Below, one piece after another: positions 3,286 to 48,400 of a DNA stretch of 64,000 nucleotides (within the stretch, counting starts at the first letter, position 1; each line of letters starts with the position of its first letter). This DNA is from Hydrolagus colliei (Eukaryota). Both the position numbers and the translations under genes were made by a program. The notes under the pieces were generated by a model, which saw only the letters and a program-made list of their open reading frames with translations, ran no database searches and was not told the DNA's origin. Location of the stretch: contig CM068767.1 in NCBI GenBank assembly GCA_035084275.1, positions 5,766,001 to 5,830,000 on the forward strand, in the 5' to 3' direction.

Positions 3286-3420
3286 NNNNNNNNNNNNNNN
3301 NNNNNNNNNNNNNNNNNNNNNNNNNNNNNNNNNNNNNNNNNNNNNNNNNNNNNNNNNNNNNNNNNNNNNNNNNNNNNNNNNNNNNNNNNNNNNNNNNNNN
3401 NNNNNNNNNNNNNNNNNNNN
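3286..3420. other. Assembly gap (135 N)
   Basis: Run of N after a G-rich tract. Confidence 0.99.
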
Positions 3421-3537: not shown

Positions 3538-3737
3538 NNNNNNNNNNNNNNNNNNNNNNNNNNNNNNNNNNNNNNNNNNNNNNNNNNNNNNNNNNNNNNN
3601 NNNNNNNNNNNNNNNNNNNNNNNNNNNNNNNNNNNNNNNNNNNNNNNNNNNNNNNNNNNNNNNNNNNNNNNNNNNNNNNNNNNNNNNNNNNNNNNNNNNN
3701 NNNNNNNNNNNNNNNNNNNNNNNNNNNNNNNNNNNNN
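3538..3737. other. Assembly gap (200 N)
   Basis: Run of N after a C-rich tract. Confidence 0.99.
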
Positions 3738-19755: not shown

Positions 19756-20554
19756 CTTCTGCTCTACATCAAATGCATGGATTGGAGGACTCTTTAACAA
19801 ATGTGGATATACTTTGGGACTGGCCTAATAGCCTCTTCTGTGTTCCTGAGACTTTAAAGGAGGATACAAAATACTTTGTGAGCAACTGGGGGTGGGGAAG
19901 GGGTGGTGGTGGGTAAGGGCACTCTTACTCAGTCTCTCCTTTTCAGCTCAGCTCTCTATTCCATGCTTAACATGAGCAACCAAGCTGATCTGAATTAATT
20001 GCATGCATACTAATGAATCCGGCCTTGAAATTCCTTGTAAAAAAAAATGATTAAGCTGCTAATTAAAGCTGTTTAGAACTTGTTTCTCTGTTTCTAAGCC
20101 ATCAGCAAACCCTGATAATTAACATGTAAATTACCCCAGAGGTGATGGGGTAGGCGGGGGGGGGGGGAAGAGAGAGCAAAGAAGGCACAAGGGACAGGTA
20201 CACACCCCGCTCTCTCTCTCTCCCTCTCTTGAGTCCGTATGGTAGCTTAATTATTGCCTGAATACCGAAACATCACAATTATGAATAGTGGCGTTTGTTT
20301 TAGCGGCAATGAGGTAATTACCCAAATGGCACTTGGAGAGAATTTTCAGGACATTTGTCTTCGCTGCCTCTGGCAACGAGGTTGAGAATGATGAAGCTGC
20401 TTGATAAGCAAACATATTTAGCAAAATGATGTTTAAACGTGACACGACTATTAATTAGCCCGTGTTTATATACACTGTACTGTATATAGTACATATGCAT
20501 ATGTATATTTATTCAGACAGTTTATTTATTTCCTTATGCTCATTCAGACATGCG

Positions 20555-20890: not shown

Positions 20891-22111
20891 ACACATCCTG
20901 GTTACAGCCCTGAAATGGCCCTTGTTCCGTTGCCTTGGAGGAGTATCTTTGTGGGTTTATATCTCACCTCGGTAAGATATAGGCCTTCCTTCTCATGGAA
21001 CTGGCTAGTGTGTAGCTGCCTGTAGCTGGCTATGGTTCGATGCCATTTGTGATGCTCTAATGTACTGTGAGATCACAGTGTAGGAAGGCTAATTCTCAGT
21101 GATGGGACAATCTTAAGTCAGTGATCTCACAGAGACTGCGGTTCAATGTGGTAAAACAAGGCACTGATTGGACCATCCCCAACAATGTGACCGTCACAAG
21201 AACTTGGGATCCTCTGGATCTCTCCCGTCAGGTGAGAGATCTTCGGTGGGAAACAGCATCTCCGAGAGGGACTTGTCGAGCTGGAATAGGCTGTCAACGC
21301 AATGTGCAGACCCAACCAACACTTGGCAAGGATATTCAATTGGCTGCCGCGTTTCGCCCACAAAATAGACAGTCAATTCTCTTTAAAGTATATTCCGGTG
21401 AAGCGTTTTGAGACACAGTCTAGAAGACGTGAAAAGCGCTTTATCGAATGCAAGTATTATTATTGTTATTCTTTGACTATTCGCGGCTGATAAGGTTAAG
21501 GATACAGAATAACAAAGTGCAGTAGACAACAGGGTGGAAAGTGCGACATTCTGTCACGGATCCAATCTATTTATCGCATGAAATCCGTGGGGAGACGTCG
21601 CATTTTTCAACTCTAAACTGCAGTTCACACACAGTCATCTGAAAGGGCTTGGGAGAAGATTTAATAGTACACATCATTCACCCTCTTAAAGGGGCAATGG
21701 CTGACATTTCACCCACTGTATATTGTATATTCGCCCACAAATTCACAGTTAACTCACTTTATAGTAAATTCTGTGAAGTGCTTTGGGACGTCGATAAGAT
21801 GTGAAATGCTAGGATTATTATTATTATCCAAGCAAATAAAAGTTGCGTTGCCCGAAAATCGGGGCAAAAATAACAATTATTATTTCCTGTGATGGTTTGA
21901 CCCAATAATGATCCTTGCATGTCTTCTAGACTGTGTCTCAAAGCGCTTCACAGAATATACTGTAAAGCGAATTGACTGTATGTTTGCGGGCGAAACGTGG
22001 CCTCTCGTGCCAAAAACAACACAGTAACTTTGGACCCAACTATGCTTATTTTCAGGCAAGCCGAGGAATAGTAAATTACTGGAGGTGGAAAGCAATCAGT
22101 GAAAGGTTAGA

Positions 22112-23506
22112 ATGAAACCACCAAAGTTTCCCTACCTGGGTTTTTTCTGCCTATTCACCCGCCTAGAAAGCGCCACATTGGGCAAAACAGCCTGGAGAGC
22201 TGGTGGAGTAACGGATACATCCGTGGGAATCCTGGAGGGGAGCAGGTTTAAGGCGGCATGTGATTTCGGCCGGGTTAAGTCGCCTTGGGGAGTCTTTGAA
22301 ATCGAATGGGAGCGTTCCTCTGGCGGAGAGGGGATGGAAAGGATCCTTCACCACTCCGTCACTCCCGAGCAGGAGACAGTCCAATACCTGAGTGATTGGA
22401 TCAAAGCCAGATTGCACGGCAGCTCCCTCAACTCCACCGTGTCCGTCTTGACCATTGACTCAATGGTCATCCAGGACACGGGCAAATACGTTTGCTACGT
22501 CAATGGAGTCAAACAGCGCGCGTTCAACGTCTTTGTCTGCGTCCCCTTCAGCAAGATGGTCATGGATTTCGATCCAGAGAAGCCGGTGGAAGAGTCTCAC
22601 ATCCATATAACGTGTCGGGCAGGCATTGGGTTTCCCGAGCCCCTGGTCCAATGGTTCTCCAATGGGAATGACATCACCCACAAGGCCAACACTACCTTGG
22701 TGCGCTCAATCGACCACAAGATCCTGGTGAGGACTTCCATAACGGTCAAAGCCAAGAGAGGGTTGAGGTACATATGTAGCGTTTGGAACCAGTACATCGA
22801 AAACCTCCTGGTGGACTGGGTGGTCCCTGTGCCCGGCGTCACCGTGCGGACCCCGATCGCGGATGTACTGGGGGTACGCGGGAAAAGCGTGCTGCTCATC
22901 TGCGACATCGACATCCCCGGCAACGATCCGGTCACCATCGCGGAGCTGGGCTTCTACTGGGTCATCAGGGACCTGGATATGACTGAGCGCTTGGTCTACT
23001 CCTTCGTGAACGAGAGGCAAGACTTGGAAGAACAGGACCCGGCGTTCGCCGGCAGGGCCTCGCTTTCGTGGGAGAACTTCCTTCGCGGATCGATCGACCT
23101 GAGGCTGGCGAACGTGTCGATCGACGACATGGGCGACTACGTCTGCCGGGTCAAGAAGGACAACGAGGTGATGGGCGAGGCCTCTCTGGAGCTTCGAGTG
23201 GCTTCACCTTACAGCAAACCGACCATCGAATATTCTACTTACCCGGAAGTCCAGGAGCACAGTAGTGTGTCACTCACTTGCTTGACCGAAGGCGGGTTTC
23301 CTCTGGGGAGTGTCCATTGGCGGACGAACAGTGACGAGGATCTCACCTCTCGCTCCAGGACGTCGGTCAAGCTGACGAACGGCCATTTCGACATGTCCAG
23401 TGAGCTGACCGTTTCAGTGTCTCAAGGAGCTCGCTTCACTTGCTCCGTAGAGAACCCTTGGCTGGAGGCACGGCCTAGTTCCACTCTCGTCTTTGTTGAC
23501 CAGTAA
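22112..23506 (+). CDS. Single-exon B7-family (CD276/B7-H3-like) protein with four Ig domains (IgV-IgC-IgV-IgC); putative signal peptide, no TM or cytoplasmic tail
   Basis: Uninterrupted 464-aa ORF with four Ig Cys/Trp sets: ACDFG..IEW..DTGKYVC; ITCRAGIGFPEPLVQW..YICSVWN; LICDI..FYW..LRLANVSIDDMGDYVCRV; VASPYSKP..LTCLTEGGFP..VHW..FTCSVENP. The last two closely resemble CD276 V and C domains. Three N-glycosylation sequons (NST, NTT, NVS). A splice acceptor (ttattttcag, AG at 22054-22055) lies 56 nt upstream of the ATG. Confidence 0.9.
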   Translation: MKPPKFPYLGFFCLFTRLESATLGKTAWRAGGVTDTSVGILEGSRFKAACDFGRVKSPWGVFEIEWERSSGGEGMERILHHSVTPEQETVQYLSDWIKARLHGSSLNSTVSVLTIDSMVIQDTGKYVCYVNGVKQRAFNVFVCVPFSKMVMDFDPEKPVEESHIHITCRAGIGFPEPLVQWFSNGNDITHKANTTLVRSIDHKILVRTSITVKAKRGLRYICSVWNQYIENLLVDWVVPVPGVTVRTPIADVLGVRGKSVLLICDIDIPGNDPVTIAELGFYWVIRDLDMTERLVYSFVNERQDLEEQDPAFAGRASLSWENFLRGSIDLRLANVSIDDMGDYVCRVKKDNEVMGEASLELRVASPYSKPTIEYSTYPEVQEHSSVSLTCLTEGGFPLGSVHWRTNSDEDLTSRSRTSVKLTNGHFDMSSELTVSVSQGARFTCSVENPWLEARPSSTLVFVDQ

Positions 23507-25706
23507 ACGGTGGGGCTTGGGCCCTCAGCCGGTCGTTCGTGGGTTCGTTCATTCTTGCGTCCGTCCGTTGTCGAAGTATATATTCGGAACTCTGTACAGT
23601 TTGCTATTTTTTGGATGGCTTATTCAGAAGAAAAAAATAATATATCAATACAGTATTTTGTTTCTCTCTCCTCCGAAAACAAGAGCAAGGCTTGTATCAT
23701 ATTTCAGCGAGTTTTTTTTTGGCATTAAAAATGAATGACGCCTACAAAAAGTTTGGCGCCATAGGATTGAAAGCAGGGTCCAAACAAACAAAACACACGA
23801 GCAGCGTATCTATAAAAACAATATATTATTAATAGTGCTCAGTACAACGCACTCGTTGCCACGCCTTGCACACCTCATCGGGGAACATGGCAAAGTGCTT
23901 CAACGGGATGCACTGTAAAGTGGAATGACTGTACCTATGTATGTTTGGGGAGCGTCAGTCGGTCAGAAATTATTTAGAGTTTAACTTAATCTCGCCCAAA
24001 CGCATTTGTTGGTGTCTCCTAGCGCGGAGGCTACCGGTAGATTTTGATATTCGAAACCCAAACTCCGCTGAAACGGATCTTGGCTTTGCAAAGTCCCAGA
24101 TAAAAAAAAAGAGAGACGGTGACTTCATTCGGAGTTGACGCGACCGGAATCGTTTTAATTGGCAGTAAATGACAAAGGGGGTTGATTTCAGCTTTGCCTG
24201 CTCTCGTCGGTCTTTTCTTTGTGGGTTTGTGTGTGTCTGTGTGTGTGTGTGTGTGTCTATAGCTCTCTTTCAGCTTTCAATTGAATTGGTTGCATTAGCA
24301 AGCAAAGCGAGTGACCGGCAAAGAGAGGCTTTGGGTTCTTGAAGGAAATGTACGCATCAGGAATTATGGTGAGTTCAATTTTTTTAATATATACATGTAT
24401 GTGTGTGCGTGTCTCCTTGGATTTGGTTTATAAAATATGGAGCATCAGACAAGATGAAATCTTCCTTGATGACTGACTGATTGACTGTCTCTCTCTCTCT
24501 GTCTCACACACACACACACACAAAAGAATTTGGCTCGTAAGAGAAAGGGATGGATAGGATGAAGGGGAAGCCACCACTGGTGTTTCTCTGGAGCTATAGC
24601 AACAGGGGAAACATGCCGAGCTGAAATTGACCAGAATCAACTGATTGTATTCAGGTGGCGGCCAGGAAGAAGTTGGCAAGAGTCGTTCAGGTGAGTGTTG
24701 TATGTGATTGTGAGTGTGTTGTGGGACAGTGTGTTGTGTGAGTGTGTGACTGTGTGAGTGTGTGACTGTGTGTGTGTGTGTGTGTGTGTGAATAGAGCAT
24801 TCAAGCTACAACAGCTTCCCATTATGGGATTCGGATCAGAACTTGGATTTAGGACAAATAAAAAAAAAGTTAACCAGAACAACAAGATCATTGTTTTGCC
24901 ACCCACCACCACCCCCACGTCCCCCACCACCCCCTTCCCAACACACCCGTCTCTCTCTCGTTTAGACAAAGAGTGGGAGGGAAGAGAGTGGGAGGGAGGG
25001 AAGAGAGGGGGGAAAAAGAGGGAAAGAGGGACAGTAGTTAGAGAGAGGAAGAGGGTGAAAGAGAGCGAGAGAAAGGTGGGAGGGACAGAAGGAGGAAGGA
25101 AGTTCTTTCACAACAAGTTCAAACATTTATAGGCAGCTCTTTCTAGCTGCTGCTTTCTCTTATTATGTATGTGTGTGTGAGAGTGTGTGTGTGTGTGGAG
25201 GTGGCATCTTTACTATGAATAGTAAAGCATGAGCTTGAATTTGAAATTCTACCCCCACCCCCCACCACCACTTCCCTCGATCAAAAGGATACTCTTAATT
25301 AAACAGGACACAATTTGGTGAGAGTCTCAGGGAAGCAGCGGTGTGGAGGTGATCTGAGAATTGTGAGTTTCTGTTCAGTTTCTAAAATGTTTATTTTTAA
25401 TGTTTTTTAAGGGAGCGCAATAATAATAATAATAATCCTTGCATTTGATATAGCGCTTTTCACGTCTTTTAGACGTCTCAAAGGGACAGACTGAAATAAA
25501 CTGAATCGACTGTACATTTTGTGGGCGAAAATATGTGGTGTGTCAGTGTGGGTGGGTGTCAAGCGCACACTGATACTCACACAATATTAATCCTTGCATT
25601 TGGCCTAGCGCCTTATCTGGTTGGAAGGACGTCTCAAAGCGCCTCGCAGGATTTACTGTGAATAGGATTGACAGTGTATTTGCGGGCTTGCGTGCATTCA
25701 CATAAT

Positions 25707-25743
<37 letters not shown>

Positions 25744-26112
25744 ACACGTCCGCAAACATATGCTCACATACATTCGTATATGTAGATGTAGCTTTATACG
25801 CATGCTCAAATGCATGTGCAGGTTTGACACAAACACGCGCGCACACACACGCACACGCACACACACAAACACCTGTACTAGTAACAGGTGTTGTTCACCC
25901 AGCACAATTGCGCTCCCTGCCTCCCGGGGGATTTCATGAATATTTCATGTTTCATGAATAGATTGTGTTTAATTCATTGCTCGGCCAGTCTCCTCTATCC
26001 AGCTGTGCGGGTGAGCATTACTGAGCACGGGGCCGAGTTACCTGGCAGCGTTCGGCGTCTTTGCTGTCGCCTCCACCCGCTGTCTAGTCTCTTGTTTTTC
26101 GCGTCGTCTCGT

Positions 26113-26575
26113 GAGTCCCGTAGCTCAGTGATTGGAGCACTCGCCTCGCAAGCCCATTGAACCTGGGTTCAATTCCAGGCCAGGGCGAATCCTTGGGCAA
26201 GTCTCCTTACTCCGCAGACGCGCCTAATAATAATCCCTCCAAAAAAGCACACAATAATAAAATTGGTCATTTCAATCCACGACTGTTTGTGGGGGACGCT
26301 GCTGTGCGCAATTGGCTGCCGCGTTTCGCCCACAAATATATACACTCAATTCACTTCACAGTATATTCTGTGAATCGGTTTGAGACGTTGATAAGATGTG
26401 AAAAGTGCAAGGATCAAATACAAGGATTCTTATTATAATAATCCTTCCAAATCCCCCCCAAATTGGTCACTTCAATCCATGACTGTCTGTGGGGACACTG
26501 CTGTGAGTTCCACCCACCAGAATATACGGTGAATTCACTTTACAGTGTACTGCGTGAAGCACTTTGAAGACGTTT
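26113..26575 (+). mobile_element. Full SINE (26113-26440) followed in tandem by a second partial copy
   Basis: The first (att)n tail runs into the internal linker of a second core and tail. Confidence 0.88.
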
Positions 26576-26579
26576 GCAA

Positions 26580-26690
26580 TCAAAACAGAAGTCGCTGGGA
26601 AGGCATTGCAGGTCAGGCAGCATCTATGGAGAGACAGAGAGAGAGGAAAATGAGTTGACATTTCAGGTTGACTCGGGACCTTTTCGACCT
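26580..26690 (-). mobile_element. Second, more degenerate copy of the same hammerhead-associated repeat
   Basis: aaaacagaagtcgctgggaa..gcaggtcaggcagcatctatggagag..gagttgacatttcaggttg; clearly homologous to 63186-63290. Confidence 0.65.
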
Positions 26691-27082
26691 TTTCCCATTA
26701 GGCCCATCGATGGATCTGGTTCCCGGGGCTTGGGTGGGTCTTCAACCCAAAGTTCAACCCTATGTCTGTAGCAGTGACTGCCCCGCGCTCTTGGGAAAGG
26801 CGCTCTACAAGTGTCATTTTGGTGTTGTCGTACGTGCCTTTGTGAGGGGACTCAAACCGCTTTGCCTTGACAATTTGGACCGCTGACGGTGTGCGTCTCT
26901 TCCTGCTATACAAAGGTAGTGTCGTGGTTGTTGTTGTTGTCCCATCATCGGGCGAAGAAAGGCATAGTTTTTATTGATGGAGATCTAATCTGCTCGTTTG
27001 CCTACCATTTCCATGTACGGCATCGCCTCCTTCGCCTTGTGGGTAGATTTGCATTGGCCTGGAGCCAGCGCCGGCGGCTAGG

Positions 27083-28500
27083 ATGTGGAAGGAAGCCGGA
27101 CTAGCCGTGCGGGCGGGCCAGGCGTCTGTGTCCGGAGGATCTCCGGGTCTCCCCGGATCCGCAGCTGCCGTTGTCCAGCCGGGAACCGGGGCGAACAAGG
27201 ACCGGAGGATGGCTTCGGAGACGTCGCCGCCGCCGGTGAATGTAGGGGTGGCAGCCGTCTTCCTCTCCGACGAGCCTCTCTCCTCCGCGCTGGCGGTGGA
27301 AGCCCTGGTGAGGGGCGGCCGGTACCAGGAAGCCATCGGACGCTGTGACGCCCTGTTGAACGCCCGCCCCGGACACTCGCTCCACCTCCTGCTGACCCGG
27401 GCCTTGGCCTGGGTGCTGTCCGGTGGCCACGGCGCACACGGGGTGGTGGACTACCTCCAGGCCTTTGCCGACCGGCAGCAGGAAACGCTGGACTTCATCG
27501 CCACCAGGCAGAGGGACTATTTGCCTCGCATCGTGGAGGCGTGTCGCGACTACCTCGCCCACCGCCACCGGGACCGGGAGGAGCCTCCCTCCGGTCACGC
27601 GCTGAGCGACTGCCAGCGCTTCCTGCGGGAAATAGCCCCCGGGGCCCGGCCCCCGCCCGAGCCCGGCAAGGCCGAGGCCCCAAGCGCCGAGGTCCTGGTG
27701 GAGCGAGCGGCGTTGCGTTACACGGCCGGCGCCGGGGAGGACGACACCATCCTGGACCTGGCCTCGGCCTTCAACGTCTCGCCAGCGCCGGCCGAGCGGA
27801 GGTTTCGGGAGCTCTTCCCTCCCAGGGACGCCGCCGCCATCTTGGATCAGGCCAAGCGCTCGGCGGAGTCGCGTTTCGCCGAGTACCGGGAGGCGGTGAG
27901 GTGCCGGGCGCAGCTACGCGGCGAGGGAGGGGCCGAGCTCCTGGCCCGGGTCTCCCTGGTGCTGGGGCTCGTCCTCCGGCTGCAGCCGGGCGAGAACCGG
28001 GACCTGCGGGTCCGGCTGGCCGACTGCGGCCTCCTGCGCGGCGACTCCGCCGGCTCCCTCGCCGCCTGCCACCGGCTGCTGGGCTCCGACCCGCAAACCT
28101 ACCACAACACCATCCTGGCCATCCGCGGATTCTGCCACCTGCGGGCGCTCCGGACCCCCGAGGCCCTGGAGGACTTCCAGGCGGTGCTGGAGCACGGCTC
28201 CCCGCACCCCGGCAGCTGCGTGAAGGCTCTGTGCGGCCGGGCCGTGGCGAGAATGACGGCCGGCGGCACCTATCTCACCGCGCTGGACTACATCACCGCC
28301 TGCCGGCTCCGGCCGGACGAGACGGCCCTGGTGACCAAGTCCTACGTGCCCTGGAATCTCCGAGGTTTGCTCTACAAGGTGCTCCAGGAGGAAGGGCAGA
28401 AGATCCTTCGAGGGAAAGCCACACAGCCACTGGCCAGCCCCCCGCACAGAGGGAAAAAGCGAGCTCAGCAAGGTTCCCAAGGCTCCTTCTTCAAAGAGGG
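27083..28500 (+). CDS. TTC34: TTC34 coding exon 1 (large, GC/CpG-rich; true start uncertain)
   Basis: Long ORF with TPR-like helices ([21 protein letters not shown]). Donor GG|gtaagc at 28501, phase 2. Confidence 0.85.
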
Positions 28501-31500
28501 GTAAGCTCTATACAGTGAAATAACAACAAATTGTATTGACACAGTAGATTTGCACATCCCAAGACAGTTAGGGATTAAGACCCAAATTGGGGATTGGGAT
28601 CAGGTGAGTAAGGGTAGGGAGGGTGCCCAAAGGTGCAGGGAAAAAGGAGGGTCTTGAGGCTGGCCATGAAGGAGGGAAGGGAGGGAGGCGAAGGGACTGT
28701 GGGATGGGGTTCCAGAGGATGGCGGAGGAGAGGCTGAAAGCCTAACCCCACATATGGTGGACATGGCGCAGGCCACATCAACCTAACACTGTAATAATAT
28801 ATTAAAATCCTTGCGTTCGACAGGGCGCATTACCACATCTTCGAGACGTCTCAAAGCGCTTTACGGGATATACTGTAAAAAGTCAATTGACTGTACAATA
28901 TGTGGGCCAAATGGGCTTCAACGGTCTGGTCTGTAACATTAGTTCAGGATTAAGACCCAAACTGGGAATCGTGGATAAGATGGGAAAAGGGTAGGAGGGT
29001 GCCCATAAGGCAAGGGGCGAAAAGGAAGGGTTTGAAATTGGCACGGCTTGATGGTTCTTTGGGAGTGGGGGGTGGGGAGGGAACGGGCATTAAAACCCAG
29101 GACTAAAACCAGTGGTGGGGGTCTTTGCTTCCTCCAGGGACGCGTTGGGGGTTCACTACTTGGCTTCGCTGCTGCTGGAGTTGGATCCCTCGGACGACGA
29201 GTCTCGCATCTTGTCGGCGGACGCTCTGTACCAACTGGACCGCGTGGAGGAAGCTCACCAGGTCCTGCTGGTCTCTCTGAACGGCCCCGCGCACCGGCCT
29301 CCGGTTCTGGCCCGCCTTGCCCTGCTTCAGCTCAAGAAAGGTTTCCTCTACGATGCTAACCAGGTAGTTGTGTACTCTGCCCCCACCCTCAGCCCCCACC
29401 CCCCACCCCCGAACAGGCCCTGTGTGTCCCAACGCAAAGAGAGTGAAGTCCGACCTAGAAGGAGAAGGAGATGGTTCGAGTCTGTGGAGCTCCTGTAGCT
29501 CAATGGTTAGAGCACTCGCCTTACTCGCCTGTGTTCAAATCCAGGCAGGTCAGGGCGAAATCTTGGGCAAGTTTCCTTACTCCACACACATACACACGCG
29601 GCTAATAATAATTCATCCATCCGCAATAATAAAATTGGTCATTACATTCCACGACTGTTTGTGGGGGGGACGCTGTTGTGCGCAAATTGGCTGCCGCGTT
29701 TCGCCCACAAAATACACAGTCAATTCACTTTACAGTGTATTCTGTGAAGCGCTTTGAGACGTCGATAAGATTGAAAAGCTCTGTATCAAATGCAAGGATT
29801 ATTATTATTCGTGATTATTAATGTAACCAGACAAGATGGGGGCGGGTGGGGGAATTCTCCCGGCAGGTGAGACCTGTTGTACCGCGTTTTACCACAAGGC
29901 AGCGCTGTGACCACAGATTTCCCAAATCCGTACCTGTACCACCTGCACTCAGGTGTGTAACCACAAGGGGTCGCTCTAACCACGTAGCCGCCCAAGCTAG
30001 TGCGGCTCTCTATGTCTGCCACAGGAGGGCGATAAAACCCTAAACCAGGCAGCCACACACCAGGATTGTCTGGATACTGTAGACGCTGGATAATAATAAG
30101 AATAATTCTGGCCTTATCATGTCCTCTAGACGTCTCGAAGAGCTTCACAGAGTATGCCGTCATGCGAATTGACTGTATATTCGCGGGCGAAGCGCACGAA
30201 ACGGGCACAGCGGTGTCTCACAAACGGTCGTGGATTGAAACGACCGATTTATTGTTGGGCTATTTTTCTGTGGAGGGATTATTGTGGAATTCTTTACCCC
30301 CAAAGGGCTGTTGATGCTCAGTCCTTTGAACATATTCAAGACCGAGATAGGTAGATTTCTCTTTGGGACGTCCTCCAGACGTGAAAGGCGCTATATAAGT
30401 GCAATATTGTCGTTGTTGTTCTCATTCATACAGGGATCGACGGGTATGGGGAATAAGGCAGGTAGCTGGTGTTAGAATGGAATACCAGCCACGATTCAAT
30501 GGCGTGGGCAGGCTCGATGGGCCGAATGGCCTACTCCTTCTCTATGTTCTTAGGTGTGTGGAGTAAGGAAACTCACCCAGGGTTTCACCCCCGGTCGGGA
30601 ATCGAACCCGGGTCTCCCTCGCTTTTCGAGGCGAGCGCTCGAAACCACTTCGACTACTGGAGTCCAGGATTGGAGCGAAGTGAAGAGGGCAAAACGATTG
30701 GCTTTTTTCCTTTCAGCTGATCAAGAAAGTGATTCAGATCGGAGACACCGCCTGTCTCCTGCCCATCATGGACATCTTCAGATCGGAGGACCGTGGGCTG
30801 ATGGAGAGACATTGTCACTCCAACGCAACTTCAATCCTCCAGAACAAGGAAGGGGACACTTACATCAAAGAGGCTGTGGCCTATCTCTCCCTTGCCATCA
30901 TCTCTTCGGGTGAGGATCCGTCACTCAACCATAGTCTGTCTCCTCAAATAATAATAGAATAATAATAATAATATTAATAATAATCCTTGCATTTGACGTG
31001 GCGCTTTTCACATCTTATCGACATCTCAAAAGCGCTTCACAGAACATACTGTAAAGTGAATCGACTGGATATTTGTGGGCGAAACGTGGCAGCCAATTGC
31101 GCACAGCAGCGTTCCCCCACAAACAGTCGTGGATTGAAAATTGCCGATTTTATTAGGCATCTGTGTGTGAGCGCGCATGTGTGTGGAGTAAGGAAACTTG
31201 CCCAAGGTTTCGCCCAATCTGCCTTGGGATCTGCCTGGATTCGAACACAGGTCTCATGCTTGTAAGGCGAGTGCTTTACTAACCCCTGAGCTACAGAAGC
31301 TCCACAATCCTTGTTTATCGCGTCGTCGAGGCACAGGATTTTCCTGTGAAGTGGATTTGCTGCCCAATTGTCCCTTCAACAGCCAGGAAATTAATTTGAC
31401 GGATTTTAATTCTTGAGGGTGGGTGGGTGGGTGGGTGGGTGGGTGGGGGGGGTATTGTTGGTCAACACACAGGGAGAAACTCACTTCTGTTTTCGAAACG

Positions 31501-36902: not shown

Positions 36903-39575
36903 GCACCTCCTCTCAGTCAACAACTAGAAGTGTCTGACTTTTGGTGACTTGTTCTGAAGAGTTTTGACGTGTTTATGGAGCTCCTTTCACGTCGGGAGGA
37001 TGTCCCAAGGCGCTGAACAGTCCCGGACGGGACCCGAGCAAGGGAGAGAGGCAGGGTGGTGGGTGGGGGTGGGGGAAGTTCTAGTTGTCTCAAAGTGCTT
37101 CACAGAACATACTGTAAAGTAAATTGACTGTATGTTTGTGGGCGAAACACGGCAGCCAATTGCGCAATTGCGCAGCGTCCCCCACAAACAGCCGTGGATT
37201 GAAAGGAACCAATTTTTTATTATGGGTTGTTTTTGGACGGATTATATTATTAGGCGCGTGGAGTATGGAAACTTGCCCAATTAGAATAGAGAAGCGAGTT
37301 TCTCTCCCGCTGTGTCAGCCCGCCAACCCTTCAGGAGAAAATGATCGATCTCTTCTTCAACAACAAAATGACGCTTTCACGTAGCGCATTTCACGTCAGG
37401 AGAACGTCCCAAGCGCTCTGAGACGCCGTCCGGCGTGGAGGGCACTATATAAATCAAAGTTGTTGTTGTTGTCCCAAGACCCGAGCTGGGGTTAGACTCG
37501 AGTAGTTGAGATTGTGGGCCTGGTGGATGTCAGTCTTAGCCTTGCGTTTTCTATCACATTCCTGGCAATAAAACTCATGGCTGGAAAGTATAGGAACTGG
37601 GTCCTTGTTATCCTTATTTGGTTTGAAGCTCTCACCTCTCCATAGTGACTCCCAGACTAACTGTAATTCAGAACATCTGACTCTCCCGAGTGTCTTTAAC
37701 CCTGCGTTTACTTAACAAGCGGAACAGGCATAGGATGAGGCCATTCAGCCCATCAAGTAACTTACACTACATTAGATCTTGGCAGATCTTTCATTCCAAT
37801 GCCATATCTCTTCTGCTGAAGTCTCTGTAAGCTTCCTCATTAATTCTACTTCAAACAGTTTCCTATGTCAGAGCGTTCCACATCTTCACAGCCCTGCGCT
37901 AGAGGGAGTGAGTTCCACAGGTGAGGGGGAAGGAGGAACTGAGCTTTGGGTCCTGGATTGGGAAAGGCGGGTGTTGCCGGGCAAACGGAGAGGCCATGGG
38001 TGGAACGTGTAAATTGCACCAAAGTGCTGATCAAATGTGTGGGATTGACATGGAGCCAGAGGGTAAATACTGTCACTGGAAGCCTTCCAGGAAGTTCTGG
38101 GAGCTTGGCCAAACACATCTTCTTGAAGCCTAGAATATCTAATGGGGTTTCCAAATTAGCCTGATTGACTCTCAATTGCTGAAACTTTTACTGGGGCCCA
38201 TTTCTGGGGGAAAAAGCCCAGAGCCCTATTTTCTTTCTCAGTGTCCTTTTTGTGGACGTGTTTTTAAGTCTGTTCCTCTTTAACAGGATGTTAGCTTGAG
38301 CAGCCTCCTGGCCCCATTATGTCACGTTGACCAGACCTGATCCTCATTACTTAACTCCTGGTGCTTTTTTTTAACATCAACTTGCACTTTTTTAACATCA
38401 ACTTGCATAAAGACATTCACGCAAGATGCCTAGCATCTCGCGAGGGCATAATGTCAAGGTGGGGGGAGGGAGGAGGTGAGTGTCAGCACGGTCAAAGAGG
38501 GAGGTCCTCAGTCGCGATCAAAAAGAGGACGAAGGAGGAGGCAAGATGGAGGGAGGGGAGAAATTTCTCAAGCTACGAGAGATGGCGCAATGGCTGAAAG
38601 GGCGGATGTGTTGGCGGTGGAGCAGGGGGGCGGGCGAGGGACAAGCAGGAGGCCAGACTAATGTGAACTTAATAATTATAATAATAATCCTTGCATTTGA
38701 TATACATAGGCCTTTTCACATCTTATTGACGTCCTAAAGTGCTTCACAGAATATACTGTGCAGTGATTTGACTGTACACATTTGTGGGTGAAACACAGCA
38801 GCCAATTGAGCAAGGCAGCGTCCCCCCCACACAAACAGTCGTGGATTGAAAACGACCAATTCTGATTGGTGTGTATTATTGGGGACGGATTATTATTAGT
38901 TGTGTGTGTGTGTGTGCGCGCGTATGTGTGTGGGTGTGTGGGGGTGTGTGGAGTAAGGAAACTTGCCCGAGGTTTCGCCCTGAACCTGCCCGGATTCGAA
39001 CGCGCAGCTCTCTCGCGCTTGTTAAGGGACCGCGCACTCTAACTGGGTTACTTTGGTTCGGGCAGGCGGCATCCCAGGAGGCGAAGACCTTGGCCGGAGA
39101 GAGTCGCCAGGAGAAGGCTCTGCGTTGTCACACGGTGGCTGTGCTGGCCAGCGACTCTGCCGGGCACGTGCGGGCGCGGGCCGCGTGCCTGGCCAGGCTG
39201 AGGCAGTACGAGAGAGCGGTGGGCGACCTGAGCCGACTCATCGACCGGCGCGGCTCCCCCGAGCCGGTGGCGGACTACTGCGCCAGGGGCCACGTCAGGC
39301 TGCTGGCCCTCAGGGACCTCGAGGCTTGCCAGGACTACGCGGAGGCCCTGAGGCTCGACCAGCCGGCCGCCCTGGCCCTCATCGCCCGCAGGCCCGGTCG
39401 GTCCGCGCTGTCCCAGCGCTTCCACCGCGCGGCTCTCGGCCGCTTCGAGCGAGGGCTCCACCAGGAGGCCTGGAGACTGGCGGACAGTGGGATGGTGGTG
39501 GACGAGGCCAACGTTGAGCTCAGGAGACTGAAAGCCAGGATCAAGAGGGAGGATTCCAGCTGCGTGGTTCACTAG
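27083..39575 (+). CDS. TTC34: Tetratricopeptide repeat domain 34 (whole gene span, 7 coding exons, 2997 nt, 998 aa from this ATG)
   Basis: Exons join in frame through GT-AG introns of phase 2,0,1,0,1,0. The peptide matches recalled TTC34 blocks ([32 protein letters not shown]; [13 protein letters not shown]; [11 protein letters not shown]). It lies directly upstream of MMEL1 on the same strand, as in human. Confidence 0.9.
28565..28770 (-). mobile_element. L2-like 3' fragment (antisense); a related copy lies at about 28940-29065
   Basis: Reverse complement resembles the L2 ORF2 C-terminus and 3'UTR ([14 protein letters not shown]). Confidence 0.65.
29138..29363 (+). CDS. TTC34: TTC34 coding exon 2
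   Basis: Acceptor cctccag|G; DALGVHYL...YDANQ; donor CAG|gtagtt. Confidence 0.92.
29486..29809 (+). mobile_element. Same SINE family, full length (TTC34 intron 2)
   Basis: Head, core and tail present. Confidence 0.9.
30090..30665 (-). mobile_element. Divergent SINE copy split by the CR1 insertion (body 30090-30283, head 30551-30665)
   Basis: The consensus ggagggattatt|attaggcgtgtg junction is broken exactly by the CR1 fragment. Confidence 0.8.
30284..30552 (+). mobile_element. CR1-clade LINE 3' end, itself interrupted by an L2-type tail at about 30362-30430
   Basis: gtggaattctttaccccaaagggctg..atattcaagaccgagataggtagattt and the CR1 tail ggctcgatgggccgaatggcctactcct..tatgttctta. Confidence 0.8.
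30717..30909 (+). CDS. TTC34: TTC34 coding exon 3
   Basis: Acceptor tttcag|CTG; [14 protein letters not shown]...[13 protein letters not shown]; donor G|gtgagg. Confidence 0.92.
30955..31303 (-). mobile_element. Same SINE family, full length (TTC34 intron 3)
   Basis: Reverse head, core and tail. Confidence 0.9.
32795..32961 (+). CDS. TTC34: TTC34 coding exon 4
   Basis: (CT)n tract plus ttag acceptor; [14 protein letters not shown]...LCKQE; donor GAG|gtacag. Confidence 0.92.
34516..34764 (-). mobile_element. Same SINE family, head missing
   Basis: Reverse core and tail. Confidence 0.85.
34872..35139 (+). CDS. TTC34: TTC34 coding exon 5
   Basis: Acceptor cgcag|GAA; [11 protein letters not shown]...[10 protein letters not shown]...[13 protein letters not shown]; donor G|gtgcgt. 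Confidence 0.92.
35186..35540 (+). mobile_element. Same SINE family, full length; fills most of TTC34 intron 5
   Basis: Head, core and tail present. Confidence 0.9.
35613..35827 (+). CDS. TTC34: TTC34 coding exon 6
   Basis: Acceptor ctacag|GA; GMYEDAL...RRLVAQ; donor CAG|gtaaga. Confidence 0.92.
35852..36221 (+). mobile_element. Same SINE family, full length
   Basis: Head, core and tail present. Confidence 0.9.
37080..37280 (-). mobile_element. Same SINE family, partial
   Basis: Reverse core and linker. Confidence 0.8.
37710..38135 (-). mobile_element. Antisense CR1 tail (about 37710-37890) adjoining an antisense L2 fragment (about 37900-38135)
   Basis: aggccattcagcccatc (reverse CR1 tail), cgttccacatcttcaca; the L2-like part reads LWNSLPL on the minus strand. 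Confidence 0.55.
38671..39043 (-). mobile_element. Same SINE family, near full length, abutting the TTC34 last acceptor
   Basis: Reverse tail, core and head ending in cactctaac. Confidence 0.88.
39066..39575 (+). CDS. TTC34: TTC34 terminal coding exon
   Basis: Acceptor ggcag|GCG; AASQEAKTL...[16 protein letters not shown], stop TAG at 39573-39575. Confidence 0.9.
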   Translation, partial: AASQEAKTLAGESRQEKALRCHTVAVLASDSAGHVRARAACLARLRQYERAVGDLSRLIDRRGSPEPVADYCARGHVRLLALRDLEACQDYAEALRLDQPAALALIARRPGRSALSQRFHRAALGRFERGLHQEAWRLADSGMVVDEANVELRRLKARIKREDSSCVVH

Positions 39576-46917: not shown

Positions 46918-48400
46918 CCATCAAGTTATCGACCCATCTCCAACCTCCCGTTTCTATCCAAGGTCCTTGAAAGAGTGGTTGCCTCCCAGCTCCGCTCTTT
47001 ACTTTCAACTCACTCACTCCTTGAACCCCTACAATCAGGTTTCCGCCCTATCCACAGCACAGAAGCTGCCCTGGTTAAGGTTACAAATGACATCCTAACC
47101 GCCTGTGACCAGGGCTCCCTCTGCCTCCTCGTCCTCCTTGACCTGTCTGCTGCGTTCGACACAGTCGATCACACCATCCTCCTTCAACGTCTTTCCTCCC
47201 ACCTCAACCTTCAAGGCACAGTCCTTGACTGGTTCCATTCCTATCTGACCCACCGTTTACACTTTGTATCTTCCAATGGTTTTTCTTCAAACCCCCGCAC
47301 AGTTTCTCACGGCGTCCCTCTGTCCTCGGTCCCCTCCTTTTCACCCTTTACACGCTCTCTCTGGGCGACGTCATCCGCAGACATGGGGTAAATTTCCACA
47401 TGTATGCGGATGACACCCAACTGTACCTTTCTGCCTCATCCCTCAACCCCCAGACCATCGATGTTCTGACAGCATGTCTGTCCAACATCGAGTCCTGGAC
47501 GAGGGACAACGTTTTGCAATTGAACGTGAGTAAGACCGAGGCCCTCCTGATTGGCTCAAGCCAACGCCTCCGCACATCGGGCGCTGCCAGCCTCAACATC
47601 CAAGGCTGTACTCTCCACCTCACAAAGCCAGTCAGGAACCTCGGGGTCACGTTCGACCAAAAACTTTCCTTCCTCCCCCACATCCGCGCCTTGACTGGCA
47701 CCGCCTATTTCCACCTGCACAATATTGCCAGGCTCTACAACTATCTTACCCCCCGCGCTGCCGAAACACTCGTGCAGAGGCGTACATCACCTCACGGCTG
47801 GACTACGGAAACTCTCTCCTCGTCGGCCTCCCCAGTTCCTCCATTCACAGGCTGCAGGTCATCCAAAACTCTGCAGCCCGTGTACTATCCCGCACCCGCC
47901 TCCGCGACCACATAACCCCCACCCTCGCCCGTCTCCACTGGCTCCCCATCCTCCAGAGGATCGAGTTCAAGATCCTCGTCCTCACCTTCAAGGCCTTACA
48001 CGGCCTTGCCCCATCCTACCTAACCCATCTACTCTCCCCCTACACGCCCACCCGGACCCTCCGTTCATCAGGACTTGGCCTGCTCCAAGCCCCCCGCCCG
48101 AACCGCCCCACCATCGGAGGCCGGGCCTTCAGTTTCTCCGCTCCCACCCTATGGAATGCCATCCCTCAATCCCTCCGTCTCGTCTCTTCCCTTTCCTCTT
48201 TCAAGGCCGGTTTGAAGACTTTCCTCTTCGATCGTGCCTTTTGTTCCACCCCGAACTCTTTTACCTCCCCTTCGTGTTTCACCCCTTCCCAAACACTCCC
48301 CTCCCAGCTCGGGTCACACGCCTCCTGTGCAGCGCCTTGGGACGTCCTCCCGACGTGAAAGGCGCTCTATAAATGTAAATTGTTGTTGTTGTTGTTGTTA
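46918..48400 (+). mobile_element. 5'-truncated L2-clade LINE (RT domain to 3' tail) with two frameshifts
   Basis: [60 protein letters not shown]; tail gcgccttgggacgtcc..aaggcgctctataaatg(ttg)n. Frame breaks near 47320 and 47775. Confidence 0.92.

What the first reader, a model, noticed from the sequence alone, without database searches (positions are those of the whole stretch)
22112..23506. Intronless, anchor-less four-Ig (V-C-V-C) B7/CD276-like gene: candidate secreted co-signalling decoy
Seen: one continuous 1395-nt ORF encodes V-C-V-C Ig domains and stops about ten residues after the last conserved C-domain cysteine. It has no hydrophobic TM or GPI signal, and I see no convincing phase-1 donor at the domain end. 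Established: B7-family genes normally have one exon per Ig domain (phase-1 introns) and separate TM and cytoplasmic exons. Inference: this is a retroposed or intron-lost, probably secreted B7-like ligand kept intact by selection, in a lineage near the origin of adaptive immunity. The two VC units are highly diverged from each other, so the duplication is ancient and unlike the near-identical four-Ig B7-H3 duplication in mammals. The N-terminal hydrophobic stretch (YLGFFCLF) is short, so the signal peptide is plausible but not certain.
Basis: partly seen in the sequence, partly recalled or inferred. Interest (0 to 1): 0.75.

Follow-up and report, generated by a model that had tools for sequence, protein, structure and literature searches.

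The report
Ancient secreted four-Ig B7-H3 paralogue
This is a real, selectively maintained gene for a secreted four-immunoglobulin-domain relative of the immune checkpoint ligand B7-H3 (CD276), encoded in one coding exon and without a membrane anchor, shared by chimaeras, sharks, rays, sturgeons and coelacanth and apparently never described, although automatic annotations of its orthologues already sit in public databases.

Summary
The ORF at 22112..23506 (+, 464 aa) is real. It encodes signal peptide-V-C-V-C, with all four Cys-Trp-Cys Ig cores intact, and it ends two residues after the last G strand, with no TM or GPI tail.

It is not lineage-specific. Full-length orthologues that stop at the same place occur in Callorhinchus, four elasmobranchs, paddlefish/sturgeons and coelacanth. 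In the five loci I could read, the CDS is likewise one exon. Shark bona fide CD276 spans 53 kb in at least six exons.

dN/dS among elasmobranchs is 0.21-0.36, and every domain is under constraint. The VC1 and VC2 units each form a clade holding all ten species, so the four-Ig layout predates the split between cartilaginous and bony fishes. Both units group with CD276 rather than with BTN/BTNL2-like proteins. An AlphaFold model (pLDDT 82) best matches solved human 4Ig B7-H3.

- A 3' splice-site motif conserved in all five chondrichthyan loci, 56-80 nt upstream of the ATG, implies a 5'UTR intron. Only the CDS is intronless.
- Retroposition is not demonstrated.
- The decoy function is speculation.
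- The stop lies 20 residues after the last cysteine, not about 10.

No paper describing the family was found. Moderately interesting: a new B7-family variant.

The parts
22034..22055 (+). Conserved 3' splice-site-like motif (branch-point-like ACCCAAC, pyrimidine tract, CAG); the putative coding exon would begin at 22056
   Evidence: The motif ACAACTATGyTTATTTwCAG|G aligns in the window and in L001, L004, L002 and L003, 56-80 nt upstream of the conserved start codon. Its function as an acceptor is inferred, not shown.
22056..22111 (+). Putative 5'UTR portion of the coding exon; contains an in-frame TGA at 22100-22102
   Evidence: The in-frame stop 12 nt before the ATG excludes an upstream coding exon in this frame. 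The stretch is partly alignable with the elasmobranch upstream sequence.
22112..22183 (+). Start codon and predicted signal peptide (about aa 1-24; h-region YLGFFCLF)
   Evidence: It is the only hydrophobic N-terminal stretch (KD9 1.79) and aligns with the more hydrophobic leaders of the orthologues. AF2 pLDDT is below 50 for residues 1-34. The cleavage site is not predicted by any dedicated tool.
22223..22543 (+). IgV domain 1 (aa 38-144; C50, W66, C128)
   Evidence: Pfam V-set/Ig hits; Cys-Trp-Cys invariant in 10 species, Cys-Cys spacing 78; AF2 beta-sandwich. C143 at its end is invariant in the 7 chondrichthyans only.
22544..22825 (+). IgC domain 1 plus the conserved C1-V2 linker (aa 145-238; C168, W181, C222; YIENLLVDWVVPVPG)
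   Evidence: C-type Cys-Cys spacing of 54. The segment aa 229-243 is the most conserved part of the protein: 80% identity to elasmobranchs and 57% between cartilaginous and bony fishes.
22826..23206 (+). IgV domain 2 (aa 239-365; C264, W283, C345)
   Evidence: Pfam V-set 251-363. This is the domain most similar to the CD276 V domain. Lowest dN among the domains.
23207..23503 (+). IgC domain 2 through to the C-terminus (aa 366-464; C390, W403, C444; ...NPWLEARPSSTLVFVDQ)
   Evidence: Pfam Ig_3, C2-set_3 and C1-set hits at 369-454. The complete G strand is followed by only two residues.
23504..23506 (+). Stop codon TAA, positionally conserved in all orthologues
   Evidence: All ten proteins end within 0-2 residues of this point. 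DNA was checked in six loci.
23724..23729 (+). ATTAAA poly(A)-signal-like hexamer, 218 nt after the stop
   Evidence: Pattern scan. Whether it is used is not known.

Best explanation
The ORF is the holocephalan orthologue of an ancient, so far unnamed jawed-vertebrate gene of the B7 family, whose closest named relative is CD276/B7-H3.

Shown:
- The entire coding sequence lies in one exon.
- The product is leader-V1-C1-V2-C2 with four intact Ig cores.
- It terminates at a positionally conserved stop right after the C2 domain, with no transmembrane segment or GPI signal.
- The gene is under purifying selection.
- The same gene, with the same ends, exists in chimaeras, sharks, skates/rays, sturgeons/paddlefish and coelacanth.
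- It is a paralogue of CD276, not its orthologue.
- The four-Ig arrangement predates the split between cartilaginous and bony fishes.

Inferred mechanism:
- A non-coding first exon is spliced onto the coding exon at a conserved acceptor about 56 nt before the ATG.
- The leader takes the protein into the secretory pathway and is cleaved near residue 21-24.
- The glycosylated four-Ig rod of about 50 kDa is released as a soluble protein.
- Like other B7 ligands, it engages an IgSF receptor through a V-domain face, and so acts as a diffusible ligand (agonist or competitor) rather than a cell-bound one.
- In cartilaginous fishes the odd, invariant Cys143 at the V1-C1 hinge may make it a disulfide-linked dimer. 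That would favour receptor cross-linking over simple decoy action.
For: - ORF, and length beyond chance.
- Domain content and hallmark residues.
- CD276 is the best solved-structure sequence match (1e-44), far ahead of BTNL8, BTN1A1, ICOS-L and PD-L1.
- AF2 model with pLDDT 82.4 shows four Ig domains. Foldseek's top hit is human 4Ig B7-H3 (9ly6_A, E = 1.4e-26, 444 columns), and single V-C units superpose on PD-L1, B7-H3 and BTN at TM 0.74-0.85.
- Orthologues and their names.
- Identical C-terminal end and no hydrophobic tail in any orthologue.
- Single-exon CDS in Chiloscyllium, Rhinoraja, Narcine, Scyliorhinus and Polyodon (gene range equals CDS length).
- Control: Scyliorhinus CD276 spans 52.9 kb, with V, C, TM and three cytoplasmic exons.
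- dN/dS is 0.21-0.36 overall and below 0.55 in every domain.
- No conserved coding block downstream, no conserved donor before the stop, and no TM relic after it.
- Tree: VC1 clade 100/100 and VC2 clade 99/99, each containing all ten species; VC1+VC2+CD276 separate from BTN/BTNL2-like at 96/94; bona fide shark CD276 groups with tetrapod CD276.
- Conserved acceptor motif upstream of the ATG.
- A linked single-copy conserved non-coding element supports orthology of the loci.
Against: - Secretion is inferred from sequence only. No signal-peptide predictor was available, and the window's h-region is short (8-9 residues).
- The RefSeq model of the closest relative (Callorhinchus, P0001) starts at an internal Met and lacks the leader.
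- No expression data could be examined, so the 5' exon, the poly(A) site and the absence of alternative TM-bearing isoforms are unverified.
- An Ensembl Callorhinchus model (P0006) splices out of V2 into an unrelated hydrophobic tail. Its odd ends are a SINE-like repeat and a peptide absent from the window.
- The receptor, the tissue of expression and even an immune role are unknown.
- Cys143 is not conserved outside cartilaginous fishes.
- The sister relation of VC2 to CD276 is weak (75/82), and VC1+VC2 monophyly is not rejected (p-AU 0.43).
- B7-family sampling in the tree was limited to CD276 and BTN/BTNL2-like proteins.
Confidence: 0.72

Rival explanations
1. The protein has a membrane-bound form. 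The ORF would be only the ectodomain part of a longer gene, with alternative splicing or read-through joining it to a downstream TM/cytoplasmic exon, as in every other B7-family gene. The soluble form would then be one isoform.
For: All named B7/BTN relatives are membrane proteins (established knowledge; TM segments are visible in P0147, P0126, P0170 and P0012). A donor-like motif sits 4 nt after the stop in the window (ACG|GTGGGG) and in Chiloscyllium (ACG|GTGAGT). A hydrophobic ORF preceded by an acceptor-like tttcag lies at about 24176-24260. An Ensembl Callorhinchus model ends in a hydrophobic tail.
Against: The stop codon is positionally conserved in ten species spanning more than 400 My. 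The donor-like motif lies after the stop, so it cannot extend the protein, and it is absent in the four other loci. No downstream coding block is conserved between the window and the elasmobranch loci within 3.6-10 kb. The hydrophobic ORF at 24176-24290 is largely encoded by a (TG)n microsatellite. The peptide of the Ensembl tail is not encoded in the window. The first 100-500 nt after the stop are conserved at nucleotide level among elasmobranchs, like a contiguous 3'UTR.
Confidence: 0.08
2. It is a retrogene: a reverse-transcribed copy of an mRNA for a soluble splice form of an ancestral four-Ig B7-H3-like gene. The copy inserted before the gnathostome radiation and later acquired a promoter and a 5' non-coding exon. 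This is the reader's origin hypothesis, and it is compatible with the main explanation of what the gene is now.
For: At least four family-typical introns (leader/V1, V1/C1, C1/V2, V2/C2) are missing together, and the TM and cytoplasmic exons are missing too (against 63 and 65). Retrogenes commonly recruit upstream 5'UTR exons (established knowledge), which fits the conserved acceptor.
Against: No poly(A) relic, target-site duplication or parental multi-exon gene with a VC1-type unit was found. Such marks would not survive more than 400 My, so the idea is essentially untestable from these data. The A22 run 8 nt after the paddlefish stop has no upstream poly(A) signal and is more likely a microsatellite. 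Stepwise intron loss, or origin by exon fusion, explains the same facts.
Confidence: 0.3
3. The protein is secreted but its main role is not lymphocyte co-signalling. It could be, for example, a reproductive-tract or gamete-associated, matrix or adhesion protein.
For: A Siberian-sturgeon sperm proteome reports changes in proteins called 'butyrophilin-like protein 2' and 'CD276 antigen' (PMC11291920). Similar names, 'butyrophilin-like protein 2' and 'CD276 antigen-like', are carried by the two Acipenser ruthenus orthologues of this gene (XP_058857980.1, XP_034760594.2). An omega of 0.2-0.36 is typical of both immune and reproductive proteins. Mammalian CD276 itself has non-immune roles (established knowledge).
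Against: The accession numbers could not be checked because no supplementary files are held, and sturgeons also have a bona fide CD276 (P0052). The link is therefore only a coincidence of names so far. All structural relatives are immune ligands.
Confidence: 0.15
4. It is a decaying or non-functional copy (a processed pseudogene or a chance ORF).
For: The ORF lacks the introns and the anchor expected of the family. SINE-like repeats lie within 110 nt upstream and a few hundred nt downstream. The protein is not on record as a called gene in the collection searched.
Against: The 464-codon ORF is intact, against at most 257 aa in shuffles. Orthologous intact ORFs occur in ten species of four major lineages with the same start and stop. 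dN/dS is 0.21-0.36. All structural core residues are invariant. GC3 is 0.72, as expected for coding sequence.
Confidence: 0.01

Closest known systems
CD276 / B7-H3 (B7 family), including the human 4Ig isoform
   Same: It is the best sequence match among solved structures: each human V-C unit aligns to aa 239-459 at about 77 bits. It is the best structural match over all four domains (9ly6_A, E = 1.4e-26). Both have the (A/S)PYSKP-type V-C junction. Both V-C units fall in the CD276-containing clade rather than with BTN/BTNL2-like proteins (96/94).
   Different: It is not the CD276 orthologue. Sharks have a separate 2-Ig, TM-anchored, multi-exon CD276 (P0147, P0126) that groups with tetrapod CD276. 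Mammalian 4Ig-B7-H3 arose by a recent duplication (the Canis units are nearly identical). Here VC1 and VC2 are 29% identical and diverged before the chondrichthyan-osteichthyan split. The window gene has no TM or cytoplasmic tail, and its CDS is a single exon.
BTNL2 (butyrophilin-like 2), the name NCBI gives several orthologues
   Same: V-C-V-C order of four Ig domains and no B30.2 domain.
   Different: BTNL2-like proteins of mammals, turtle and teleosts form separate groups outside the CD276+VC1+VC2 clade (96/94), and their two units are lineage-specific duplicates. BTN-family proteins score lower in sequence searches (about 51 bits against 156 for CD276). From established knowledge, not tested here: mammalian BTNL2 is membrane-anchored and multi-exonic.
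Soluble forms of B7 ligands (sB7-H3, sPD-L1 and others) made by shedding or alternative splicing
   Same: The end product would be the same: a free B7 ectodomain able to bind the receptor without cell contact. That is the mode of action proposed here.
   Different: Those are by-products of membrane-protein genes (established knowledge). Here the germline gene encodes only the soluble form, and that state has been conserved for more than 400 My.
Virus-borne intronless Ig/B7-like genes, e.g. the 'CD276 antigen-like' gene of the medaka Teratorn herpesvirus-transposon (PMC5601938)
   Same: An intronless B7-H3-like ORF in a fish genome.
   Different: The window gene sits in conserved host synteny, with a linked CNE from chimaera to paddlefish. 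It has no viral neighbours in the window. Viral structures match much more weakly (best E = 4e-15, 12% identity).

Membership tests
B7 family (CD80/86, CD274, ICOSLG, CD276, VTCN1, HHLA2 ...) | Ectodomain built of IgV-IgC tandem(s) with the B7/BTN-type fold | tested here: met
   Pfam V-set, C2-set_3 and C2-set_2 hits. Each V-C unit superposes on PD-L1, B7-H3, BTN and ICOS-L at TM 0.74-0.85 and rmsd about 3 A.
B7 family (CD80/86, CD274, ICOSLG, CD276, VTCN1, HHLA2 ...) | Sequence affinity to family members above other IgSF proteins | tested here: met
   The top PDB hits by sequence are CD276, BTNL8, BTN1A1 and ICOS-L, with BTN3A and PD-L1 close behind. The profile search returns CD276 as the best single-copy non-orthologue.
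B7 family (CD80/86, CD274, ICOSLG, CD276, VTCN1, HHLA2 ...) | Type I membrane anchor (TM plus cytoplasmic tail, or GPI) | tested here: not met
   No TM-grade segment and no hydrophobic C-terminus in any of ten orthologues. No conserved downstream exon.
B7 family (CD80/86, CD274, ICOSLG, CD276, VTCN1, HHLA2 ...) | One exon per Ig domain, separated by phase-1 introns | tested here: not met
   The CDS is uninterrupted in the window and in five other species. Shark CD276 keeps the canonical layout.
B7 family (CD80/86, CD274, ICOSLG, CD276, VTCN1, HHLA2 ...) | Binds a CD28-family or other IgSF receptor and modulates lymphocyte activation | not testable with these tools
   Needs binding and functional assays.
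CD276 orthologous group | Groups with vertebrate CD276 to the exclusion of other genes of the same species | tested here: not met
   Scyliorhinus has both P0004 (this family) and P0147 (CD276). The CD276 clade (93/83) contains the shark CD276s and excludes VC1 and VC2.
BTNL2 / butyrophilin-like | V-C units cluster with BTN/BTNL proteins | tested here: not met
   A 96/94 branch separates the BTN/BTNL2-like units from CD276+VC1+VC2.
Processed retrogene | Loss of all parental introns in the copied region | tested here: met
   No intron in the CDS.
Processed retrogene | Poly(A) tract, target-site duplications, or an identifiable intron-bearing parent | tested here: inconclusive
   None found in the window, and no parent-like protein appeared in the exhaustive profile search. 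None would be expected to survive more than 400 My. The conserved upstream acceptor shows that the gene is not wholly intronless.

The most novel reading that the evidence does not exclude
This family would be the only germline-encoded, obligately soluble member of the B7 superfamily. It would be a diffusible 'checkpoint' ligand, covalently dimeric in cartilaginous fishes, that was present in the first jawed vertebrates alongside membrane B7-H3 and was later lost in teleosts and tetrapods. If it shares or competes for the still-unidentified B7-H3 receptor, it would offer a natural soluble probe for de-orphanising that receptor. Alternatively, it defines a lost ligand-receptor axis of early adaptive immunity, or of fertilisation if the sturgeon sperm-proteome lead holds.
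Probability: 0.3. Interest if true: 0.7.

Novelty: new variant of a known kind. Interest (0 to 1): 0.45.

Why it matters
B7-family ligands are the central switches of T-cell co-stimulation and inhibition, and all named members act from a cell surface. A paralogue of B7-H3 that has been made only as a secreted four-Ig protein since before cartilaginous and bony fishes diverged would show that soluble co-signalling ligands were part of the earliest jawed-vertebrate repertoire. It would also add an unnamed orthologous group to the family's evolutionary history. That group is currently mislabelled 'CD276-like', 'BTNL2' or 'uncharacterized'.

The receptor of B7-H3 is still unknown, so a naturally soluble close relative is a ready-made reagent for receptor hunting in fish models such as sturgeon or catshark.

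The finding also corrects annotation. These genes should not be transferred the names or functions of CD276 or BTNL2.

Tried and rejected
- Downstream TM exon. tblastx and blastn of 23507-27082 against 10 kb downstream of four elasmobranch genes found nothing conserved. Three-frame hydrophobicity scans found only (TG)n-encoded artefacts at 24176-24290. The T-rich +1-frame stretch 'IFGTLYSLLFFGWLIQKKK' just after the stop lies in AT-rich UTR-like sequence, and no donor could reach it.
- TM relic after the stop. A tblastn alignment to Cetorhinus CD276 ran through the stop, but the read-through peptide is charged and barely similar.
- Ensembl Callorhinchus model P0006 as evidence for splicing. 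Its N-terminal part maps to a SINE-like repeat (window 21151-21231) and its C-terminal peptide is absent from the window, so it is uninformative.
- TTC34 or mitofusin synteny. No TPR-gene match lies within 10 kb in the elasmobranch or paddlefish loci, and there is no mitofusin in the window. The flanks were too short for these large genomes. I did not independently verify that the TPR ORFs are TTC34; Pfam shows only weak TPR hits.
- The upstream conserved block as a repeat or an ncRNA. It is single-copy, and Rfam gives only sub-threshold miRNA-like hits in its non-conserved GA/CT-rich centre.
- Viral origin. BFVD matches are weak and generic.
- Wider distribution. The alignment query and the paddlefish query to the 90%-clustered database added no new taxa. 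The first was capped at 8000 candidates and even missed coelacanth, so absence in gar, bowfin, bichir, lungfish and amphibians is provisional.
- Fetching the Callorhinchus and Latimeria loci, and looking up the window's own protein. No exact record was found, so there is no holocephalan-specific dN/dS.
- Literature. Six searches and six look-ups in four held papers found no description of the family. The key B7-evolution paper (Flajnik et al. 2012, PMC3709836) is not held.
- The first AF2 run, with 7 sequences, was poor (pLDDT 63.6) and was replaced by the 10-sequence run.
Full report
OBSERVATION. An in-frame TGA lies 12 nt upstream of the ATG. In 300 dinucleotide-preserving shuffles of the same 1395 nt, the longest ORF averaged 114 aa and never exceeded 257 aa. 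GC3 is 0.72 against GC2 of 0.43, as expected for coding sequence.

Pfam detects V-set and C-type Ig domains. Each of the four domains has the Cys-Trp-Cys core. Cys-Cys spacings are 78 and 81 residues for the V domains and 54 and 54 for the C domains. No 19-residue window reaches transmembrane-grade hydrophobicity, and the last 20 residues average KD -0.22.

One detail needs correcting. The stop is 20 residues after the last cysteine (C444 to Q464), not about ten. The C2 domain is therefore complete and only two residues follow its G strand.

WHAT ORGANISM AND WHAT RELATIVES. The closest database protein is Callorhinchus milii XP_007900360.1, an 'uncharacterized protein' at 78% identity. The window therefore comes from another holocephalan.

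Full-length relatives at 45-50% identity occur in Pristiophorus, Chiloscyllium, Scyliorhinus, Narcine and Rhinoraja. They are annotated 'butyrophilin-like protein 2', 'CD276 antigen-like' or 'hypothetical'.

An exhaustive HMMER profile search of 1.84 billion representatives added only two further full-length groups:
- paddlefish and sturgeons (463 aa, e.g. XP_041129161.1);
- coelacanth (XP_005986153.2, 474 aa).

Other strong hits are TM-bearing tandem B7/BTN arrays of lungfish and teleosts, and bona fide CD276. Two further word-indexed searches added no taxa. Within these collections the family is therefore seen only in Chondrichthyes, Acipenseriformes and Latimeria. Absence elsewhere is provisional.

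THE ANCHOR-LESS END IS CONSERVED. All ten proteins end within two residues of the same alignment column (...SSTLVFVDQ*...SSTVTFISE*...EVITFVNKNR*...GSMVFIVW*), and none has a hydrophobic tail.

At DNA level, none of the six loci has a donor-like site before the stop that is conserved in position or in phase 1. A donor-like motif 4 nt after the stop, in the window and in Chiloscyllium, cannot alter the protein, and the other four loci lack it.

Nothing coding is conserved between the 3.6 kb downstream of the window ORF and the 10 kb downstream of four elasmobranch genes. The first 100-500 nt after the stop are conserved among elasmobranchs, like a contiguous 3'UTR.

A tblastn extension through the stop into 'TM-like' sequence proved to be a charged, barely similar peptide. 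The only TM-grade ORFs downstream (24176-24290) are largely encoded by a (TG)n microsatellite.

GENE STRUCTURE. In Chiloscyllium, Rhinoraja, Narcine, Scyliorhinus and Polyodon the annotated gene range equals the CDS length (1374-1470 nt), so each has one coding exon. As a same-lineage control, Scyliorhinus CD276 (299 aa) spans 52.9 kb, with separate V, C, TM and three cytoplasmic exons. The departure from the family's exon-per-domain rule is therefore real and ancient.

The gene is probably not intronless, however. The window and all four elasmobranch loci share the motif ACAACTATGyTTATTTwCAG|G, 56-80 nt upstream of the start codon. In the window the AG is at 22054-22055. This looks like a branch point, a pyrimidine tract and an acceptor. 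Conservation over roughly 400 My argues for a 5'UTR intron and a non-coding first exon that I could not locate.

The in-frame TGA at 22100 excludes an upstream coding exon. An ATTAAA lies 218 nt after the stop.

SELECTION. Pairwise Nei-Gojobori dN/dS among the four elasmobranch genes is 0.21-0.36 overall and below 0.55 for every domain. Against the window, dS is saturated with dN of 0.41-0.46; where dS could be estimated, omega is 0.14-0.25. Seventy-three alignment columns are invariant across ten species.

The most conserved stretch is the C1 G strand plus the C1-V2 linker (YIENLLVDWVVPVPG). It is 80% identical between chimaera and elasmobranchs and 57% between cartilaginous and bony fishes. 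This suggests a fixed C1-V2 interface.

An odd cysteine, C143, at the V1-C1 junction is invariant in the seven chondrichthyans. It is D in paddlefish and sturgeon and T in coelacanth. A covalent dimer in cartilaginous fishes is possible but untested.

FAMILY PLACEMENT. By sequence, solved CD276 is by far the best match (1.2e-44), with each human V-C unit aligning to aa 239-459. Next come BTNL8, BTN1A1, ICOS-L, BTN3A and PD-L1. The N-terminal V1-C1 half alone still hits CD276 best, but weakly. The two halves are 29% identical over 124 residues.

An AlphaFold2 model built from the ten-species alignment has mean pLDDT 82.4, with residues 35-464 confident. Foldseek's best PDB match is human 4Ig B7-H3 (9ly6_A, E = 1.4e-26, 444 columns). 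Single V-C units superpose on PD-L1, B7-H3, BTN1A1, BTN3A1 and ICOS-L at TM 0.74-0.85. Viral Ig proteins match much less well.

A maximum-likelihood tree of 40 V-C units (LG+C20+F+G4) gave these results:
- VC1 of all ten species forms one clade (100/100) and VC2 another (99/99), each mirroring the species tree.
- Together with CD276 and one bichir protein, they are separated from the BTN/BTNL2-like units (96/94).
- Shark CD276 groups with tetrapod CD276 (93/83).
- The V-C units of mammalian 4Ig-CD276 and of the BTNL2-like proteins are recent, lineage-specific duplicates.

Whether VC1 and VC2 duplicated after the split from CD276 is unresolved. VC2+CD276 has only 75/82 support, and VC1+VC2 monophyly is not rejected (p-AU 0.43).

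The gene is therefore a distinct, ancient paralogue of CD276. It is neither CD276 nor BTNL2, and its four-Ig layout predates the chondrichthyan-osteichthyan divergence.

ORTHOLOGY AND CONTEXT. A single-copy, TAATTA-rich conserved non-coding element (window about 19939-20342) lies 1.8-2.2 kb upstream of the gene. It recurs at 80-86% identity, in the same orientation, 6-9 kb upstream of the gene in Chiloscyllium, Scyliorhinus and Narcine. Part of it recurs 1 kb downstream of the paddlefish gene, inverted. This supports orthology of the loci and implies a local inversion in paddlefish.

Downstream in the window are very GC-rich TPR-containing ORFs (27083-28504 and 38871-39575). The paddlefish gene has a mitofusin gene just upstream. 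The window holds no other B7-like exon.

MECHANISM.
- Shown: this is a selectively maintained gene whose single coding exon specifies leader-V-C-V-C and nothing else.
- Inferred: the leader directs secretion. The leader is weak in the window. The paddlefish and coelacanth leaders are longer and clearly hydrophobic.
- Inferred: the soluble glycoprotein has sequons at N107, N193 and N334. N107 is present in 9 of 10 species.
- Inferred: the protein engages a receptor through a V-domain face, as other B7 ligands do, and so acts at a distance as agonist or competitor.

'Decoy' is one possibility among several. If the protein is a Cys143-linked dimer, cross-linking would be as plausible as blocking.

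A non-immune role cannot be excluded. A sturgeon sperm proteome lists 'BTNL2' and 'CD276' proteins (PMC11291920). Similar names, 'butyrophilin-like protein 2' and 'CD276 antigen-like', are carried by the two sterlet orthologues. Accession numbers could not be checked.

ORIGIN. The simultaneous absence of at least four family-typical introns and of the TM and cytoplasmic exons fits retroposition of a soluble-isoform mRNA. No hallmark of retroposition survives, and none would be expected to. No parent gene was found. In-situ intron loss explains the same facts. I rate retroposition at about 0.3.

NOVELTY AND VERDICT. I found no paper that describes this family. The main B7-evolution paper is not in the library, so prior mention cannot be excluded. 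Orthologues are already in public databases under automatic, inconsistent names.

The gene fails two features that define B7 membership, the membrane anchor and the exon-per-domain structure, while clearly belonging to that fold and clade. I therefore class it as a new variant of a known kind.

Its interpretation is partly supported. The structure, the selection and the ancient duplication hold. 'Intronless', 'retroposed', the implied lineage specificity and 'decoy' are unproven or need correction.

Interest is moderate at 0.45. This is a tidy, testable addition to B7-family evolution and a possible handle on the orphan B7-H3 axis, but it is not a surprise in kind.

Noticed in passing
window 19939-20342 (+); L001 1057-1401, L004 3053-3396, L003 4015-4323; L005 12304-12413 (inverted): A deeply conserved, single-copy non-coding element rich in TAATTA-type homeodomain-site motifs. 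It is 80-86% identical between chimaera and sharks/ray and 74% identical to paddlefish over 129 nt. It is linked to the Ig gene in all of them, but in paddlefish it lies on the other side and is inverted. It is probably a developmental enhancer of a neighbouring gene rather than part of the Ig gene. It was not found within 10 kb in Rhinoraja.
   Followed up: partly
window 20155-20231: Sub-threshold miRNA-like hairpin hits (mir-2110, mir-483 and others, 22-27 bits against gathering scores of 60-95). They fall in the G/GA-rich versus CT-rich centre of the conserved element, which is its non-conserved part. This is most likely a low-complexity artefact.
   Followed up: no
window-wide, e.g. 21337-21476 (+), 21915-22001 (-), and about 30 other sites: A SINE-like repeat tail of about 135 nt (...agcgcttcacagaatatactgtaaagcgaattgactgt...) occurs about 32 times in 64 kb, roughly once per 2 kb. 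Copies lie within 110 nt upstream of the gene's ATG. The odd N-terminus of an Ensembl Callorhinchus model (P0006) matches sequence just upstream of one copy (window 21151-21231).
   Followed up: partly
window 27083-28504 (+) and 38871-39575 (+): Two long, very GC-rich ORFs (GC3 0.86 for the first) with weak TPR hits, downstream of the Ig gene on the same strand.
   Followed up: partly
window 46975-48372 (+): Adjacent ORFs with reverse-transcriptase (RVT_1) fragments, split by a frame change: a decayed LINE-type retroelement.
   Followed up: no
window 3286-3420 and 3538-3737: Two runs of N (135 and 200 nt).
   Followed up: no
window 23510-23518; L001 11378-11386: A splice-donor-like motif 4 nt after the stop codon (ACG|GTGGGG in the window, ACG|GTGAGT in Chiloscyllium). 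It is absent in Scyliorhinus, Rhinoraja, Narcine and Polyodon. It could mark a 3'UTR intron in some species or an ancestral relic. It cannot change the protein.
   Followed up: partly
L005 11393-11425 (paddlefish): An uninterrupted run of about 22 A starts 8 nt after the paddlefish stop codon, and the paddlefish gene is inverted relative to the linked conserved element, with a mitofusin gene 3.2 kb upstream. The A-run could be a microsatellite or the trace of a secondary retro-relocation.
   Followed up: no
window 24220-24265: A (TG)n microsatellite produces TM-like 'VCVCVC' ORFs in all three frames. This is a trap for hydrophobicity-based exon hunting.
   Followed up: yes
P0001 / P0006 (Callorhinchus milii models): The RefSeq model of the closest relative starts at an internal Met (MGILEGS...) corresponding to window residue 38, so it lacks the leader. 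Either the Callorhinchus 5' end differs or the model is truncated. The locus could not be fetched.
   Followed up: partly
literature: PMC11291920: A Siberian-sturgeon sperm proteome reports altered 'butyrophilin-like protein 2' and 'CD276 antigen'. Similar names ('butyrophilin-like protein 2', 'CD276 antigen-like') are given to the two sterlet orthologues of this gene. This may be protein-level evidence and a hint of gamete association, but accessions were not available.
   Followed up: partly
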